DNA from: Octopus bimaculoides
Taxonomy: Eukaryota
DNA length: 60,887 bases
NCBI RefSeq assembly: GCF_001194135.2
Contig: NC_068998.1
Location: 13,993,371 to 14,054,257, forward strand
Direction of reading: 5' to 3'
Positions 1,278 through 58,927 of the stretch are shown one piece after another. A program made the translations under genes and the position numbers. Each line of letters opens with the position of its first letter. Positions within the stretch are counted from its first letter, which is position 1. A model generated the notes under the pieces. That model saw nothing but the letters and a program-made list of their open reading frames with translations. It made no database searches and had not been told where the DNA came from.

Positions 1278-1304
1278 ATATCAGTGAAGTTACAATGCAA
1301 ATAT
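1278..1304 (+). promoter_or_regulatory. Candidate PSE of U1 copy 1 (-61..-35)
   Basis: ATATCAGTGAAGTTACAATGCAAATAT is identical upstream of all five U1 genes at near-fixed spacing; the position is typical of snRNA PSEs. Confidence 0.75.
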
Positions 1305-1338: not shown

Positions 1339-1501
1339 ATACTTACCTGGCACAGGAGTAAACCATGATCCTCAAGGTGGTTCTCCCAAAGTGAGGTCCT
1401 TCCATTGCACTCCGGTTGGGTTGACCTTTGCGATCGCCCCAAATGTGGGCGACTCGGGTGCGCTATTTCTAAGTGTGGGGTCTGCGTTCGCGCTCACCCC
1501 G
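1339..1501 (+). ncRNA. RNU1: U1 spliceosomal snRNA, copy 1
   Basis: ATACTTACCTGG 5' end; helix H GCAC/GTGC; SL1 AACCAT/GTGGTT; SL2 loop ATTGCACTCC; SL3 TCGCCC/GGGCGA; SL4 with TTCG loop; 163 nt. Confidence 0.97.
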
Positions 1502-1521
1502 TCATATAAATCAAGAATAGA
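1502..1521 (+). terminator. Candidate snRNA 3' box of U1 copy 1
   Basis: TCATATAAATCAAGAATAGA; near-identical 20-mers follow all five genes and end in an AARnnAGA-like motif, as the vertebrate 3' box does. Confidence 0.6.
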
Positions 1522-2843
1522 AATAACCACGAAGATTTTCTTTTTTTTTATGCATTTGCACTCTTAAGGAGGACTCGTTTTCCCAGGCGCCTTCTCTCTC
1601 AGCCCCTTCCTATATTAGAACCACTGTGTTAATTGTACAGAACATTATCAATGATGTTTTGAACTGAGTATGCATAATTGCTTGTTGTGTGAATGATGTC
1701 GTGTTTTCACGTCTGTTACACTGTCTGGTTTCTATAAACAATGGCTTCGCTATCCATCTCGTTAGTAATATTTCGGTATATTACCCAAAATTTTGCCAGC
1801 TAAATTACTCATAACATTGGTAGGTTTTGGCCGGTTTAGCCCCAGAAACAAAATATTTATTCATTAGTTTTCACGTATGTGTGGGTATGTGGTTGGAAGT
1901 TTGCTTTCCACATGGTTCCGAGTTCAGTTCCACTGCATGCACCTAGGGCTTCCAATGTAGCCCCGGGCAACCAAACGTTATCAAGATGAGTAGACTTAGT
2001 CGATAGAAACTGTGTTTGTCCACTGACAACCGGTGGTGTTTTCTTTACATAACTGCTAATTGGAAGTTTTGGGAAAACAGACATAAAAATGATAGTTACT
2101 GGGGTTGATTTATTCGATTAAAATCTTCAAGGCAGTGCCCCAGCATGGCTGCAGTCCAATGACTGAAACAAGGAAAAGAAAAGATTTTTGTTTTCGGCAA
2201 TGTCGTTCATAAACTGGTGATTGTCGAATACTCACACACAAACACACGTTCAGCCGCTGAAACGGTAATTTAAAGAAGCCCTTCATATATATACATACAC
2301 ACACATAGAATAACGACATATTTGTACCCCAGCCCCCACTGACTTTGTTGCCTCATAACTACCAGATAGATACATTCTTACGAAATTTTCAACAAATACC
2401 GCTTACATTCAGAGTATATAGGGATTTGCTGCAATGAATTTTCCCAAAGGGTTGAGGGGAGGAGTTTCAGAAAATTCACACGATCCGAATTTTTTCCCTT
2501 TATATCTTTCGGGAAAATGGGCATCTTCTATTGAAAGTTTATACAAATACCTTTCAAACAACATAGATTACGATTATAAAGAAATTCGTAGGGAACATTT
2601 TTTGCAATGGGCTGGGGAAAGGGGTTTCGTAAAAACGAAGTTTCGGATCAGGAAGACCACTTAAGTTGGAATTTCTCCATTTGACAGGGATTTTTCCACT
2701 ATTTTTCTTCAGTCTTCGAAATGATAGTGGGCATCTCTATGAAAAGCATTTTGAAAATTTATGATTTCTTTCACTCCTCAACATCCCAATCCTGACCGAT
2801 TTGGGCCATATTTTTCCACTTAAAAACTATTATATACATACAT

Positions 2844-5048: not shown

Positions 5049-40690
<35,642 letters not shown>

Positions 40691-49499: not shown

Positions 49500-50600
49500 A
49501 AATAATTGTAAAATAGGTTATTATTAAAATAAATTTCATTTTCAAAATTTGATAGAATCTACAGACATTATTTTATTGTTTTGTTAATGCCTGTTTCCAA
49601 CTGACATCCGTTCTGGTCCAGCCACTACTGACAACGCGAAGCAATGGAATCGCAAACATCATGAAATAATTTGTTTGGTATTTGTGTGCATTCTCATTCA
49701 ATGGCTGCTCTCAAATCAGTGACTGTTGCAGGTTTCATAGCGCAAACTTCGTCTTTTAGGTAGTCTAGTGGTGTGAGGTCTGGTGAACACGGAGGGTATT
49801 CAATGAACCCCCTTCGTCCAATCCACCTGTTTGGCAAGATCTCATCAAGGAAGGATCTAACATCGCGATAGTAGTGTGGGGGGTGCCCCATCTTGTTGAA
49901 AAAAAAAAACTCCTCATCTTCAAAGTCTTCTCTAATGTTTGGCATGACAATCGGTTACAGCAAGTCAATGAGACCAATCACAGTAGTATAAAAAAAGAAT
50001 GGTCCAATTAATCCTCTTGATGATAAACTGCATCACACTGTAATTCTTGGTAAATTAACATGGTGTTCCACCATAACATACGCGGATTCTCAGGTCCCCA
50101 GTAGGTGCAATTGTGGCAGTTAATTGAACCATTTAATTTGAATGTGGCCTCACCATTCCGTACAATCTTTGTTGGAAAATGTGCATCTTCTACACATCGT
50201 GCCAGGTACCACTCGCAATACTGCACTTTTCGGTCTGGATCATCGTCATTAATAGCATGGACTAATCATGGAATGTAACTTAACATTGAAAACGCTTCAA
50301 AATGCATTGGACAGACGATTTTGAAATACCTACTTCATGACCCGCTTGCCGCGTAGATTTTCTTGGACTTTGGTGACATGTTTCCAGCACTCCTTGCTTT
50401 GTGGGGGTTGTTGATGCATGTGGTCTTCCGGAACGCTTCTCGTGGACATTCTGAACAGTTCCATCGGCTTCAAACTTATTTTTAATTCGAGTGATCGTAA
50501 GTCACGTTGGTGGATCTGTTTGAAGCTCCTTCCTAAACGGTCTTTGCACTTCAACTGCATTTTACACACTTCCAGCAGCAATTTAGAATGAATTTCCTAT
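49500..50600 (-). mobile_element. Tc1/mariner-superfamily DD41D (rosa/Visitor-like) transposase pseudogene
   Basis: Frameshifted motifs [21 protein letters not shown] and QQDGAPPHY...RWIGRRG..EYPPCSPDLTPLD; 41 residues between D2 and D3 after removing a +1 C. Confidence 0.8.
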
Positions 50601-50830: not shown

Positions 50831-50968
50831 ATACCTACAACTTCCTTAACTTAGAAAAGTAACGGTATATTTTTCGTTTAATTTACGGGGTGAATGTGAA
50901 CATCTGAAACGATACAGCACATAATGGCAGAGAAGCTTCTTGATAATGTCTATTCTTGATTTATATGA

Positions 50969-51131
50969 CGGGGTGAGCGCGAACGCAGACCCCACACTTA
51001 GAAATAGCGCACCCGAGTCGCCCACATTTGGGGCGATCGCAAAGGTCAACCCAACCGGAGTGCAATGGAAGGGCCTCACTTTGGGAGAACCACCTTGAGG
51101 ATCATGGTTTACTCCTGTGCCAGGTAAGTAT
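50969..51131 (-). ncRNA. RNU1: U1 spliceosomal snRNA, copy 2 (equals the consensus of the five)
   Basis: Reverse complement of copy 1 with 1 difference; full 163 nt. Confidence 0.97.
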
Positions 51132-51165
51132 GTTTTTGTCTCTTTCACTAAACTCATATATTACT

Positions 51166-51192
51166 ATATTTGCATTGTAACTTCACTGATAT
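51166..51192 (-). promoter_or_regulatory. Candidate PSE of U1 copy 2
   Basis: Same invariant 27-mer at -61..-35. Confidence 0.75.
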
Positions 51193-53113
51193 TGCCTCTA
51201 ATATTACATTCTAATATTAATTTTTCAATAAATGTCATCATATATATTATAACTTAACTACTACAATTCATTATTTCTAATTAAGTGAATTAGTAATTTA
51301 ATGCTTTAATTCGTTCAAATACTATGAAATTTAAACATTATCGCCTTGTTTAATTCAACAGTAAAGGCAAATGACCAAGGGAGACAACTCCAGTTTTATT
51401 TGAAAGTTTACCGCTAGATACGAACTGTAAAACATTTACTACTACAAAACGAGCCAATAAAAGAGCATCTTACATGATCGTTAGGCATGCTAGATATAAC
51501 AACGAAGTCTTCCTCAAATTACACACAATGACTTCTATTTTTTACAAAAATGAAAACTAACCAACGCCGGTTGTGAAGCGGTGGTAGGGGACAAATACAG
51601 CACGCACGCACACACACAGACACACACGCTCGCACGCACACACGGTATCTCTACTTATACCAGTGTAGTATGACCAGGTGTTTGATGCCCAGAATAAGTA
51701 ATATCTTGTTTCGATGAAATATAAACATACGTTCAAGAAACAATTATGTAAAAGAAGTAAAATATTATTGATGTATAAGAAACGTTTAACATCAAAATAC
51801 ATACAACATTCGATAAAACAAACTACTGACAGGAGACTTTTACAATCAATACCTGTAGCGTAGTTGGAGAGACGGCCAGGGAGGGGGGGGTTCCGCCTCA
51901 TGTGGTATAGAGGGTAGGGGAGGTGGTAACAGCAATCACAAGAGATACTCCGAATAGCACACTGTATAGCAATGACAATATATGTGTAAATAATATTTTT
52001 AGTGAATTTAACATTTTTCCTGATGGGTATAGTAAATTGATNNNNNNNNNNGGTGGGGGAAGTGGTAACAGCAATCTCAAGAGATACTCCGAATAGCACA
52101 CAGTATAGCAACGACAATATATGTGTAAACAATATTTTTAGTGAATTTAACATTTTTCCTGATGGGTATAGTAAATTGATTTGACTAGCAAAAATTTTTG
52201 TCTGGAGTATCCCCAACTCTAACAGAGAGATTGACGGACGAACAGGCAGGCAGACAGTTAGATACATAGATATGTGGGTAGGCAGGCAGGTAGGTCGGTA
52301 GGTAGGTAGGCAAATATGTAGGTACACAGATAGATACATGGCATTTATTACAGTGAAGAAAGTAACTTATAAAAAATTAACAGAAAATAACGAATGAGAA
52401 ACTTCATGAAACGGAAATTCTCAATTCTCTTTCCATTTTACGATAAACTTATTTTGATCGTGTTGAGAAATGTGTATGTGTTCGTACATACATACACAGA
52501 TAAAAGCAGAGTGCTAGAGAGGAAATTGCAATGTGTGTGTGTGTAACCGGATTCTTTAAATTTCCATCTACCATATCCAATCATAAGCCTTTGGTCGGCC
52601 CGGGACGATACTAGAAGGCACTTGCCCAAGGTGCACACAGTAAGACTAAAGTTGGATCCAGGTGTTTGGGAAGCAAACATCTAACGACATATTCAGCGTA
52701 ACAGGCGTGAAAATACGAAATCATTCACACAACAAGTAACTATGCGTACTCAATTCAAAACATTATTGAGAGAGTTTTTGCACATTAACACAGAAGTCCT
52801 CATATAGGAAGGGGCTGAGTGGGGTGAGGTGATGCGAACGTTGAAATACTGCAGGAAAACAAGTCCTCGTTAGTAGTGCAAATGGATAAACAAAAAACAA
52901 AAAAAGAATCTCCGCAACTGTTTCGTTAATAGGGTGAGGATAATCTCAGATCTACAACGAAAAGAGATAATGAATATTGTGTGTACAATAGTTGTAGTTC
53001 TTAAACGAGAGCCACTATTCTTCGTTTGAATCACGGGGTGTATCTGGTACTTTGCAACAAAGTACACAATGTAAGAGAATCTTCTCAATTAGGTCTGTTC
53101 TTGAATTATATGA

Positions 53114-53276
53114 CGGGGTGAGCGCGAACGCAGACCCCACACTTAGAAATAGCGCACCCGAGTCGCCCACATTTGGGGCGATCGCAAAGGTCAACCCAAC
53201 CGGAGTGCAATGGAAGGGCCTCATTTTGGGAGAACCATCTTGAGGATCATGGTTTACTCCTGTGCCAGGTAAGTAT
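53114..53276 (-). ncRNA. RNU1: U1 spliceosomal snRNA, copy 3
   Basis: 163 nt; 2 substitutions vs consensus (53224, 53238). Confidence 0.96.
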
Positions 53277-53310: not shown

Positions 53311-53337
53311 ATATTTGCATTGTAACTTCACTGATAT
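53311..53337 (-). promoter_or_regulatory. Candidate PSE of U1 copy 3
   Basis: Same invariant 27-mer at -61..-35. Confidence 0.75.
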
Positions 53338-56165: not shown

Positions 56166-56798
56166 NNNNNNNNNNNNNNNNNNNNNNNNNNNNNNNNNNN
56201 NNNNNNNNNNNNNNNNNNNNNNNNNNNNNNNNNNNNNNNNNNNNNNNNNNNNNNNNNNNNNNNNNNNNNNNNNNNNNNNNNNNNNNNNNNNNNNNNNNNN
56301 NNNNNNNNNNNNNNNNNNNNNNNNNNNNNNNNNNNNNNNNNNNNNNNNNNNNNNNNNNNNNNNNNNNNNNNNNNNNNNNNNNNNNNNNNNNNNNNNNNNN
56401 NNNNNNNNNNNNNNNNNNNNNNNNNNNNNNNNNNNNNNNNNNNNNNNNNNNNNNNNNNNNNNNNNNNNNNNNNNNNNNNNNNNNNNNNNNNNNNNNNNNN
56501 NNNCCTTATAAATATATATATATATATATATAAAATACAAAAATCAGAAACATCCTGACAGACGATACAAAGAAAACAAGGGTCATTCGGAGTTTTCTTT
56601 CCTCAGTCGAGTTCCAGATTATGTTTGCAATTTCGGGTGGTTATACTCGAGATTGCTCCAATCTGGCCAGCCCCAGGCAAAAACGGAGCTAAGAGCACTA
56701 GATTCAACCAAATAGGCTCCTCTCAGTCTTGAAGTGCCAAAATCGATAAGGATCATTCCAACTTCTGTAGATTGACTGTCTATTTTTTAATTATATGA

Positions 56799-56961
56799 CG
56801 GGGTGAGCGCGAACGCAGACCCCACACTTAGAAATAGCGCACCCGAGTCGCCCACATTTGGGGCGATCGCAAAGGTCAACCCAACCGGAGTGCAATGGAA
56901 GGGCCTCACTCTGGGAGAACCACCTTGAGGATCATTGTTTACTCCTGTGCCAGGTAAGTAT
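56799..56961 (-). ncRNA. RNU1: U1 spliceosomal snRNA, copy 4
   Basis: 163 nt; 2 substitutions vs consensus (56911, 56936). Confidence 0.96.
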
Positions 56962-56995: not shown

Positions 56996-57022
56996 ATATT
57001 TGCATTGTAACTTCACTGATAT
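56996..57022 (-). promoter_or_regulatory. Candidate PSE of U1 copy 4
   Basis: Same invariant 27-mer at -61..-35. Confidence 0.75.
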
Positions 57023-58160: not shown

Positions 58161-58704
58161 AACAAGTGGGCTATGTTAGAAGCCAAAGGTGCACATAATG
58201 GGACTGAACTCGGTTTGGGAAGCAAACTTGTAACCACATACACCTACATAACAAATAATGAATAAATATTACGTTTCTGTAAAGTGTCGAGAAATCAGTT
58301 GGCAATATTTTGAGTAATGAGACTTGTACCGATACATTACTAACGAGACGTGAAAATACGAAATCAATCACGATGCAAAACAATATTGAGTGGTTCTCGA
58401 GATCACGGGGTGGGGTTCGATCCGTGAACGTTGAAATGCTGTAGCACAAAAAGTCATCATTAGTAGTGCAGATGGATAAAAAACAAACTTTGCTACTGAT
58501 TTGGTACGTGGGTGGGATTAGTATTTGTCAGTTCGACAACCAAATGAGATAACGAACATGTGAGTGTAGTAGTAGTATCTAAGCGAGAACAAGAAAGTTA
58601 CTATGAAATAACTGTTTAAATTACGGGCCAGCGCGTCTGAATCAATACATTTAATTCAAACGTGATAGAGCGTTATCACTTAAGTCTATTCTTGATTTAT
58701 ATGA

Positions 58705-58867
58705 CGGGGTGAGCGCGAACGCAGACCCCACACTTAGAAATAGCGCACCCGGGTCGCCCACATTTGGGGCGATCGCAAAGGTCAACCCAACCGGAGTGCA
58801 ATGGAAGGGCCTCACTTTGGGAGAACCACCTTGAGGATCATGGTTTACTCCTGTGCCAGGTAAGTAT
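58705..58867 (-). ncRNA. RNU1: U1 spliceosomal snRNA, copy 5
   Basis: 163 nt; 1 substitution vs consensus (58752). Confidence 0.96.
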
Positions 58868-58900: not shown

Positions 58901-58927
58901 ATATTTGCATTGTAACTTCACTGATAT
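58901..58927 (-). promoter_or_regulatory. Candidate PSE of U1 copy 5
   Basis: Same invariant 27-mer at -60..-34. Confidence 0.75.

What the first reader, a model, noticed from the sequence alone, without database searches (positions are those of the whole stretch)
1461..1475. Non-canonical Sm site (UAUUUCUAAG) fixed in a five-gene U1 cluster: candidate variant U1 snRNP class
Seen: between helix H and SL4 every copy reads GCUAUUUCUAAGUG, where human U1 has AUAAUUUGUGGUAG. The AUUU core is kept, but the preceding A is U and the conserved GG after the U-tract is AA. Established: the consensus is RAU3-6GR, the seven Sm proteins each bind one base of AUUUNUG, and U7's deviant site (AAUUUGUCUAG) selects a different ring (Lsm10/11). 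Inference: together with the altered loop I, intact promoters and structure-preserving covariation, this may be an undescribed cephalopod U1 variant with an unusual Sm/Lsm core or tissue-specific role. Alternatively it is a lineage-wide rewiring of the major U1. The resemblance of CUAAG to U7's CUAG is only suggestive.
Basis: partly seen in the sequence, partly recalled or inferred. Interest (0 to 1): 0.78.

Follow-up and report, generated by a model that had tools for sequence, protein, structure and literature searches.

The report
Conserved off-consensus Sm site in U1
Five intact U1 spliceosomal RNA genes share an Sm-protein binding site (UAUUUCUAA) that breaks the textbook consensus. The identical site occurs in U1 genes of at least five other organisms, so it is most likely the normal U1 of a lineage and not a special U1 class.

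Summary
All five Rfam-confirmed U1 genes in the window read GCUAUUUCUAAGUG between helix H and stem-loop 4.

The site is not private to this cluster. ORFs that happen to lie over U1 genes led me to five other U1 lineages in marine and other metagenome contigs (35-57% GC, unrelated promoters). Their stems differ by compensatory changes, yet the 20-nt block CGCUAUUUCUAAGUGUGGGG is invariant. One of these contigs also carries a U2 gene with a canonical GAUUUUUGG site. About 20 related U1 genes with the same stem-loop 3 have the canonical AAUUUNUG(G/U/A)UAG.

The Sm ring holds AAUUUGU, so here U-A-U-U-U-C-U. A2, U3-5 and U7 are kept. Position 6 is already flipped out in human U1. Positions 8-9 are dispensable in vitro. 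Only the purine in the SmF pocket is lost from the heptad.

The resemblance to U7 is not positional. The "altered loop I" also occurs with a canonical Sm site. There is no compensatory covariation within the cluster.

Most likely this is a lineage-fixed, selected Sm-site variant of ordinary U1 that still binds a standard ring and probably leans on the U1-70K assembly route. A coexisting canonical U1 class could not be excluded, because I had no genome census, no reads and no taxon. Interest is moderate.

The parts
1339..1502 (+). U1 snRNA gene, copy a (one G-C to G-U change in SL2 relative to the cluster consensus)
   Evidence: Rfam RF00003, 131.6 bits; alignment
1464..1472 (+). Sm-site nonamer of copy a: U-A-U-U-U-C-U-A-A. 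The heptad is 1464-1470.
   Evidence: Sequence; pattern search; register taken from PMC4756616
1024..1338 (+). Conserved promoter of copy a (about -315 to -1). It has an invariant PSE-like core at about 1278-1304 that contains the octamer ATGCAAAT (1295-1302), a TATA-like TAATATATG near -31, and distal conserved patches at about -315/-295 and -256/-237.
   Evidence: Five-copy flank alignment and identity profile
1503..1524 (+). 3'-box-like element (CATATAAATCAAGAATAGA). Similarity among the copies stops about 20 nt after the 3' end of the RNA.
   Evidence: comparable A-rich CAAA..AAAG elements lie downstream of the related U1 genes
50968..51131 (-). U1 snRNA gene, copy b. It equals the cluster consensus and has the best Rfam score. 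Sm 14-mer at 50995-51008; promoter about 51132-51446.
   Evidence: Rfam 133.1 bits
53113..53276 (-). U1 snRNA gene, copy c. One change keeps a pair (U-G to U-A in SL1) and one breaks a pair in SL2. Sm 14-mer at 53140-53153.
   Evidence: Rfam 128.3 bits with an extra non-canonical pair flagged
56798..56961 (-). U1 snRNA gene, copy d. It has one broken pair in SL1 and one A-U to G-U change. Sm 14-mer at 56825-56838.
   Evidence: Rfam 126.6 bits
58704..58867 (-). U1 snRNA gene, copy e. It has one broken pair in SL3. Sm 14-mer at 58731-58744.
   Evidence: Rfam 128.5 bits

Best explanation
These are ordinary, promoter-bearing U1 snRNA genes. Their Sm site has an old, selected, lineage-specific sequence, the nonamer U-A-U-U-U-C-U-A-A, where other animals have A-A-U-U-U-N-U-G-R. 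It is most likely the normal (major) U1 of the source organism and of a wider group that shares the site, not a minor class.

It most likely still nucleates the standard seven-protein Sm ring. The positions that make base-specific contacts are intact: A2 in SmE (irreplaceable), U3 in SmG, U4 in SmD3, U5 in SmB and U7 in SmD2. Position 6 (C) is the position that is G in human U1, where it is flipped out of the SmD1 pocket. Positions 8-9 (AA for GG) lie outside the pockets and are dispensable for ring assembly in vitro. The one real loss in the heptad is the purine in the SmF pocket.

Inferred, not shown: the two lost purines (A1, called A0 in the Gemin5 papers, and the G after the U-tract) are among the positions linked to chaperone choice. 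A0 is needed for efficient human Gemin5 binding, and positions 6, 8 and 9 distinguish the U7 site, which Gemin5 does not recognise, from a spliceosomal site. U1 can tolerate their loss because, alone among snRNAs, it can reach SMN-Gemin2 through SL1 and U1-70K. U2 in the same kind of organism keeps the canonical site.
For: Shown here:
- There are five full-length U1 genes with a canonical 5' end AUACUUACCUG and loop II CAUUGCAC.
- About 315 nt of promoter and a 3' box are conserved among copies whose other flanks are unalignable.
- An identical Sm block occurs in five further U1 lineages (L001, L004, L005, L006, L007/8). These come from contigs with 35-57% GC and unrelated promoters. Compensatory changes occur in helix H, SL1 and SL2. 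47 of 169 columns vary, but none of the 20 in the block does.
- L004 carries a U2 gene with a canonical GAUUUUUGG site 600 nt from its variant U1.
- Contigs or samples with several U1 copies are homogeneous in site type: the window has 5 variant copies; L003, L010 and L013 have 2 canonical copies each; the JAAUYA01 set has 9 canonical copies.
- A decayed U1 pseudogene of the variant type exists in an independent AT-rich Logan contig, L028.

From the literature:
- Heptad register, pocket contacts, dispensability of nt 8-9, the flipped-out G6 in U1, and assembly of a ring even on U9: PMC4756616.
- Gemin5 needs the 5' adenine, whereas U1 uses SL1 and U1-70K: PMC5131779 and PMC12390936.
Against: - I have no census of U1 genes in the source genome, no RNA or read data and no taxon. 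'Major U1' is therefore inferred from homogeneity and conservation, not shown.
- In the 5' 123 nt the window's U1 is at least as close to two canonical-site U1s (L002 93.5%, L003 91.1%) as to the other variant-site U1s (85-91%).
- Monophyly of the variant group is weakly supported: 56 of 300 bootstraps, and 0 of 300 without SL4. Two coexisting paralogous classes therefore cannot be excluded.
- The block is completely frozen, even at position 6, which varies A/C/U/G in the canonical relatives. A merely 'tolerated' site would not be expected to be frozen in this way, so an added constraint is suggested.
- Three of the five copies carry one pair-breaking substitution each.
Confidence: 0.6

Rival explanations
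1. This is a variant U1 class. The genome also holds canonical-site U1 genes that make the bulk of U1. The cluster would encode a conserved minor, stage-specific or tissue-specific U1 paralogue kept alongside it, as with human vU1, Xenopus embryonic U1 or Bombyx U1 isoforms.
For: Canonical-site U1s (L002, L003) are as close or closer to the window's U1 in the 5' two-thirds than other variant-site U1s are, and L002 has the identical loop I. The tree does not separate the two types cleanly. The frozen 20-nt block suggests a specialised interaction.
Against: No contig or sample with several U1 copies mixes the two types. All functional elements other than the Sm flanks are standard. With only 8-11 differences over 123 nt, the similarity ranking is not significant. 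The only pseudogene found in an independent contig derives from the variant type. Known variant U1 classes differ by scattered substitutions, not by one frozen block shared across distant genomes (this last point is from my own knowledge).
Confidence: 0.2
2. The ring has a different composition. The changed flanks (positions 1, 8 and 9) would select a non-standard ring on U1, for example an Sm/Lsm paralogue replacing SmF or SmD1/D2, by analogy with U7 and Lsm10/11.
For: In U7, changing only positions 6, 8 and 9 switches between the Lsm10/11 ring and the spliceosomal ring, and the U7 site escapes Gemin5 (PMC12360213). Here positions 1, 8 and 9 are changed and then frozen.
Against: Positions 8-11 read AAGU here and CUAG in U7, so the similarity is not in register. 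The heptad contacts for SmE, SmG, SmD3, SmB and SmD2 are intact. Everything else is a normal U1, which needs the Sm ring surface for U1-70K and U1C (PMC4383343 abstract). U2 in a variant-site organism is canonical, so the standard ring exists there. No data on Sm/Lsm paralogues were obtainable.
Confidence: 0.07
3. The block has an added RNA-RNA role. The new 3' flank UAAGUGU would pair with nt 1-7 of U1 (AUACUUA) and so mask the 5' splice-site-binding arm and/or the Sm site in the free or precursor RNA. This would explain why the block is frozen. It is compatible with the best explanation and would not replace it.
For: Both the minimum-free-energy fold and the alignment fold close the molecule with a 7-bp helix between nt 1-7 and UAAGUGU. 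Canonical relatives manage only 4-5 bp. Structures near the Sm site are known to gate assembly of other snRNAs (PMC10584915).
Against: This was noticed after the fact. 4.7% of shuffles of the 17-nt segment reach 7 bp. Both strands are invariant, so no covariation can support the helix. In canonical relatives the pairing is not conserved. The z-score of the whole fold is only -1.5.
Confidence: 0.1
4. The cluster is dead: these are untranscribed or decaying U1 copies whose Sm site has drifted.
For: Copies c, d and e each have one pair-breaking substitution. No expression data could be obtained.
Against: 315 nt of promoter plus a 3' box are conserved among copies with otherwise unalignable flanks. 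The site is identical in five other lineages that show compensatory stem changes. A real pseudogene (L028) looks quite different: it is truncated and CpG-decayed.
Confidence: 0.03

Closest known systems
Canonical metazoan U1 snRNA (Rfam RF00003; human RNU1)
   Same: Length of about 164 nt. 5' end AUACUUACCUG. Four stem-loops plus helix H. Loop II CAUUGCAC. SL3 loop CCCCAAAUGUGGG. A UNCG tetraloop in SL4. A single-stranded Sm region of nearly the same length between helix H and SL4. Multi-copy genes with a proximal promoter element and a 3' box.
   Different: The Sm nonamer is UAUUUCUAA instead of AAUUUGUGG, and the following nucleotides are GUG instead of UAG. The purine for the SmF pocket is lost. 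So are the G after the U-tract and the A at +11, which in human U1 lies next to U1-70K Tyr38. The middle of loop I differs (CCUC for CACG), but that is common among related U1s with canonical Sm sites.
U7 snRNA Sm site (AAUUUGUCUAG; Lsm10/Lsm11 ring)
   Same: An Sm-type site that departs from the consensus after the U-tract and lacks the GG. In U7 such departures decide ring composition and escape from Gemin5.
   Different: When anchored on A2-U5, the residues do not match (AAGU here, CUAG in U7). Position 1 is A in U7 and U here. The RNA is a complete U1, not a 60-nt RNA that pairs with histone pre-mRNA.
Variant U1 genes within one genome (human vU1, and stage-specific U1 isoforms of frog, fly and silk moth; from my own knowledge and PMC10870369 and PMC8457000, listed)
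   Same: Multi-copy U1 families can contain transcribed variants, some of which have altered protein-binding sites.
   Different: Those variants coexist with a canonical major U1 and differ by scattered substitutions. Here all five copies are alike, and the deviation is one frozen block shared with distant genomes. Coexistence with a canonical U1 was not testable.
U1-specific Sm-core assembly through SL1 and U1-70K (So et al. 2016, as described in PMC5131779 and PMC12390936)
   Same: This route gives a known reason why the U1 Sm site can depart from the Gemin5-preferred AAUUUUUG. Human U1 already has G at position 6.
   Different: The known case is a one-nucleotide departure. Here three or four further positions are changed. 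Use of this route in the source organism is inferred, not tested.

Membership tests
U1 spliceosomal snRNA (RF00003) | Covariance-model score above the curated gathering score over the full model | tested here: met
   126.6-133.1 bits against 69.5, model positions 1-166, for all five copies
U1 spliceosomal snRNA (RF00003) | 5' arm AUACUUACCUG that pairs with 5' splice sites | tested here: met
   Identical in all five copies and in all related loci except the degenerate L018
U1 spliceosomal snRNA (RF00003) | Four-way junction (helix H, SL1-SL3) plus SL4, supported by covariation | tested here: met
   Across six variant-site lineages, 7 predicted pairs have compensatory double changes, in helix H, SL1 and SL2. 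Within the cluster there are only single-sided changes.
U1 spliceosomal snRNA (RF00003) | U1A-binding loop II (CAUUGCAC) | tested here: met
   Invariant
U1 spliceosomal snRNA (RF00003) | U1-70K-binding loop I (consensus GAUCAaGAAG) | tested here: inconclusive
   GAUC....AG is kept, but the middle reads CUCA. The same middle variation occurs in relatives with canonical Sm sites, including an identical loop in L002. Binding was not testable.
U1 spliceosomal snRNA (RF00003) | Sm site matching RAU(3-6)GR / AAUUUNUGR | tested here: not met
   UAUUUCUAA: pyrimidine at position 1 and AA at positions 8-9. A2, U3-5 and U7 are retained (register).
U1 spliceosomal snRNA (RF00003) | Pol II snRNA-type gene: proximal and distal promoter elements and a 3' box | tested here: inconclusive
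   About 315 nt upstream and about 20 nt downstream are conserved among copies with unalignable flanks. No reference promoter consensus exists for this unknown taxon, and promoters of the related loci do not align.
U1 spliceosomal snRNA (RF00003) | Expressed, trimethylguanosine-capped and Sm-bound RNA | not testable with these tools
U7-type Sm site (Lsm10/11 ring) | AAUUUGUCUAG, with C-U at positions 8-9, in a ~60-nt RNA whose 5' end pairs with the histone downstream element | tested here: not met
   Positions 8-11 are AAGU, and the RNA is a full U1 (definition from PMC12360213)
Intragenomic variant U1 class (vU1-like) | Coexists with a canonical major U1 in the same genome and is a minority of U1 RNA | not testable with these tools
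   Only 60.9 kb of the genome is available and it holds only variant-site copies. There were no reads. Multi-copy contigs elsewhere never mix types.

The most novel reading that the evidence does not exclude
The frozen 20-nt block CGCUAUUUCUAAGUGUGGGG marks a re-specified U1 core in a whole animal lineage. Either the Sm ring on U1 has a changed subunit or binding register, or assembly is fully Gemin5-independent, possibly combined with a helix that masks the U1 5' arm (nt 1-7 paired with UAAGUGU). U2 keeps the standard site. That would be the first natural case, outside U7, of an Sm-class spliceosomal snRNA whose Sm site was rewritten at the positions that decide chaperone and ring choice.
Probability: 0.12. 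Interest if true: 0.8.

Novelty: new variant of a known kind. Interest (0 to 1): 0.45.

Why it matters
The Sm site is treated as nearly universal, to the point that surveys discard snRNA candidates 'lacking the complete Sm site' (PMC10584915). Those surveys would have filtered out this U1.

A U1 family that has lost both flanking purines, yet is conserved to the nucleotide across very different genomes, is a natural experiment. It shows which Sm-site positions matter for ring binding (kept here) and which matter for chaperone recognition (lost here). It also bears on how far the U1-70K route frees U1 from the Gemin5 code.

In practice, it means annotation filters for U1 should not require RAU(n)GR. 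If the rarer readings hold (a changed ring, or masking of the 5' arm), it would matter considerably more.

Tried and rejected
- Sequencing runs and reads.
- Labelled comparators.
  - Searching the literature for the site as a sequence string gave only an unrelated siRNA hit.
  - Searches for the assembly and sample accessions found nothing.
  - No held paper links cephalopods with U1 snRNA.
  - The razor-shell U1/5S paper and Krol et al. 1990 are not held.
  - Marz et al. 2008 appears only in reference lists.
  - The schistosome ncRNA paper gives no U1 Sm sequence in its text.
- Other collections. GTDB genome contigs and IMG/VR gave zero matches.
- Taxon of the window. ULK4 exon peptides returned only unlabelled Logan and ENA fragments plus mammals. 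The related ULK4 locus L029 aligns only in exons (73-84%) and has no U1 within 10 kb upstream. 'Cephalopod' therefore stays unverified.
- Phylogeny. Neighbour-joining trees of 19 U1 genes, built without the Sm columns, do not resolve whether the variant-site U1s form one clade.
- Reverse-frame peptide search. It was meant as a census that would not depend on the Sm-site type. It returned only canonical, mostly vertebrate-like U1 ORFs plus one variant-type pseudogene.
- Bias in the forward-frame search. Canonical GUAAUUU puts a stop codon in that frame, so the 5:2 ratio of variant to canonical says nothing about frequency.
- Rejected: the U7 analogy (out of register).
- Rejected: a link between loop I and the Sm variant.
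- Rejected: covariation within the cluster.
- Rejected: the microRNA-family hits below gathering score in the window, which are microsatellite or palindrome artefacts.

Full report
OBSERVATION

Rfam finds five complete U1 snRNA genes in the window, at 126-133 bits against a gathering score of 69.5. One lies at 1339-1502 on the + strand. Four lie on the - strand at 50968-51131, 53113-53276, 56798-56961 and 58704-58867. All five read GCGCUAUUUCUAAGUG between the 3' strand of helix H and stem-loop 4. The exact 14-mer occurs at 1462-1475, 50995-51008, 53140-53153, 56825-56838 and 58731-58744.

However, the five copies are 98-99% identical. 'Fixed in five genes' is therefore close to a single observation.

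ARE THE GENES LIVE?

Similarity among the five copies starts about 315 nt upstream and stops about 20 nt after the RNA's 3' end. Outside that span the flanks do not align.

The stretch from -60 to -35 is identical in all copies and contains the octamer ATGCAAAT. A TATA-like TAATATATG sits near -31. An A-rich 3'-box-like element follows the gene.

This pattern is what selection on a Pol II snRNA transcription unit would leave. It is not what a decaying cluster would leave. Copy b equals the cluster consensus.

The six substitutions in the other copies are all single-sided. Three keep a pair (G-C to G-U, U-G to U-A, A-U to G-U) and three break one.

HOW I FOUND RELATIVES

I used the fact that one reading frame runs open through the U1 gene. 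A search of the protein collection with that peptide found seven short ORFs that gene callers had placed over U1 genes. I fetched their contigs.

Rfam confirmed a U1 gene on each contig. Five distinct lineages carry exactly the same GCGCUAUUUCUAAGUG: L001, L004, L005, L006, and L007 together with L008. Two carry canonical sites: L002 has GCGCAAUUUUUGUUAG, and L003 has GCACAAUUUCUGGUAG in two copies.

This search is biased towards the variant, because canonical GUAAUUU puts a stop codon in that frame. The ratio is therefore meaningless.

A scan of JGI metagenome contigs for the shared SL3 sequence (CCCCAAAUGNGGGCGACUCGG) gave 19 loci. All those with a readable site carry A-A-U-U-U-N-U-G-(G/U/A)-U-A-G, apart from one degenerate copy, L018.

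A second peptide search in a reverse frame that stays open through both site types found only canonical U1 ORFs. It also found one truncated, CpG-decayed pseudogene of the variant type (GCGUUAUUUCUAAGUGUUGGG) on an AT-rich Logan contig, L028.

WHAT THE RELATIVES SHOW

The six variant-site lineages come from very different genomes. Contig GC ranges from 35% to 57%. Their promoters do not align with one another. Their U1 sequences are 82-93% identical.

Of 169 alignment columns, 47 vary. Seven base pairs in helix H, SL1 and SL2 show compensatory double changes. The SL4 tetraloop switches among UUCG, UCCG and UACG. Yet the 20 nt CGCUAUUUCUAAGUGUGGGG never change. The site is therefore old and under purifying selection, and it is not an oddity of this cluster.

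On L004, a U2 gene 600 nt from the variant-site U1 has the standard GAUUUUUGG. The change is therefore specific to U1 and is not a general shift of the Sm code in such organisms.

No contig or sample set with several U1 copies mixes the two site types. The window has five variant copies. L003, L010 and L013 have two canonical copies each. The JAAUYA01 set has nine canonical copies.

WHAT THE CHANGE MEANS STRUCTURALLY

[quoted passage not shown] In that register the site here is U1-A2-U3-U4-U5-C6-U7, followed by A8-A9. Position by position:
- A2 is called irreplaceable, through its SmE contact and an SmF backbone contact. It is kept.
- U3, U4, U5 and U7 are the U-specific pockets of SmG, SmD3, SmB and SmD2. 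They are kept.
- Position 6 is the one where human U1 has a G that sits outside the SmD1 pocket. Among the canonical relatives it is A, C, U or G.
- The real heptad change is a pyrimidine in the SmF pocket, where a purine is preferred. Even U9 assembles a ring, though a less stable one.

The A at +11, which in human U1 lies next to Tyr38 of U1-70K, is also gone, because the flank changes from GGUAG to AAGUG.

On these grounds a standard ring is the most economical expectation.

ASSEMBLY (INFERENCE)

Human Gemin5 stacks Trp422 on the adenine 5' of AUUUUUG and needs it for efficient binding (PMC5131779). That adenine is the position that is U here.

In U7, changing only positions 6, 8 and 9 converts the Lsm10/11-type site into a spliceosomal one. 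The U7 site is not recognised by Gemin5 (PMC12360213).

Some of the changed positions are thus among those implicated in chaperone and ring choice in humans. Position 1 is needed for Gemin5 binding. Positions 8-9 are two of the three U7 switch positions.

U1 is the one snRNA that can reach SMN-Gemin2 through SL1 and U1-70K. This would explain why U1 could lose these purines while U2 did not. This step is inferred from human biochemistry and was not tested.

The U7 resemblance (CUAAG against CUAG) is out of register once both sites are anchored on A2-U5. Positions 8-11 are AAGU here and CUAG in U7.

The 'altered loop I' (GAUCCUCAAG) is not linked to the Sm change. L002 has the identical loop with a canonical Sm site. 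The four middle loop nucleotides vary freely in both groups, while GAUC....AG is constant.

'Cephalopod' could not be checked. The window carries exons of a ULK4-like kinase gene (Pfam Pkinase and HEAT_ULK4), but searches with them returned only unlabelled fragments.

WHAT REMAINS OPEN

I could not search the rest of the genome, so a coexisting canonical U1 is not excluded.

In the 5' 123 nt, the window's U1 is 93.5% identical to canonical-site L002 and 91.1% to L003. It is 85-91% identical to the other variant-site genes. Neighbour-joining trees without the Sm columns recover the variant group in only 56 of 300 bootstraps, and in none when SL4 is also left out.

With 8-11 differences per comparison this is noise-level. 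It nevertheless means I cannot show a single origin, nor rule out two paralogous classes spread over one clade.

The total invariance of the block, including position 6, also exceeds what a merely tolerated site needs.

One candidate extra constraint is that UAAGUGU is complementary to nt 1-7 of U1. Both the single-sequence fold and the alignment fold form this 7-bp helix, while canonical relatives reach only 4-5 bp. However, 4.7% of shuffles do as well, and no covariation is possible because both strands are invariant. I record it as a lead only.

VERDICT

The best reading (confidence about 0.6) is a lineage-fixed, selected, off-consensus Sm site in otherwise ordinary U1 genes that still bind a standard ring. 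The rivals are:
- a coexisting variant class, about 0.2;
- a changed ring, about 0.07;
- a dead cluster, about 0.03;
- an added RNA-pairing role, which is compatible with the best reading, about 0.1.

I found no description of this site in the searchable literature. I therefore file it as a new variant of a known kind, of moderate interest.

Noticed in passing
window 1339-1345 with 1470-1476 (the same in all five copies): U1 nt 1-7 (AUACUUA), the arm that binds 5' splice sites, is complementary to UAAGUGU just 3' of the Sm heptad. This gives 7 bp including one G-U, and folding predicts the helix. Canonical relatives reach 4-5 bp, and 4.7% of shuffles reach 7 bp.
   Followed up: partly
window 1295-1302; 51168-51175, 53313-53320, 56998-57005, 58903-58910 (- strand): An exact octamer ATGCAAAT lies inside the invariant -60..-35 promoter core of all five U1 genes. 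Five of the six octamers in the window are here. In vertebrate snRNA genes the octamer belongs to the distal element, not the proximal one (from my own knowledge).
   Followed up: partly
window 8259-8377 (-): A 5S rRNA-like element scores 57 bits against a gathering score of 38, with many broken pairs. It is probably a 5S pseudogene or a 5S-derived SINE and not a working gene.
   Followed up: no
window 40421-40687, 34743-35090, 13000-13194 (all -): These are exons of a ULK4-like kinase gene: an N-terminal MENFILY... exon, a Pkinase exon and a HEAT_ULK4 exon (Pfam). The four-copy U1 cluster lies 10-18 kb upstream of exon 1, and copy a lies beyond the last exon seen.
   Followed up: partly
window 49694-49945 (-): By eye, this 83-aa ORF resembles the C-terminal part of a mariner/Tc1-type transposase. 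Pfam gave no hit at E<=0.01.
   Followed up: partly
window 12.1-13.0 kb, 14.7-15.0 kb, 19.3-19.5 kb, 37.8-38.3 kb, 43.4-43.6 kb, 49.2-49.5 kb, 54.5-54.9 kb, 56.2-56.5 kb: Runs of N (assembly gaps) are flanked by TA/CA/GA microsatellites. The sub-threshold microRNA-family hits (mir-297, mir-3149 and others, for example at 15.8 kb) fall on such simple or palindromic repeats and are artefacts.
   Followed up: no
window 53113-53276, 56798-56961, 58704-58867: Copies c, d and e each carry one substitution that breaks a base pair (in SL2, SL1 and SL3 respectively). Copy b is the consensus. Whether all five copies are equally functional is open.
   Followed up: partly
L004 384-582 and 1196-1362; L009 and L027; L017; L016: snRNA genes are linked to other small-RNA genes on short metagenome contigs: U2 with U1 (L004, L009, L027); U1 with 5S rRNA (L017); and U1 with RNase P RNA and RNase MRP RNA within 2.4 kb (L016).
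   Followed up: no
L028 229-347 (-): A 5'-truncated, CpG-decayed U1 pseudogene derived from the variant-site type sits on an AT-rich Logan contig (run SRR8281664). It is the only variant-type sequence found outside intact genes.
   Followed up: partly
L001, L004-L007 and the window, SL4 loop: The SL4 tetraloop varies among UUCG, UCCG and UACG in the variant-site lineages (always UNCG). It is UUCG in nearly all canonical-site relatives.
   Followed up: no
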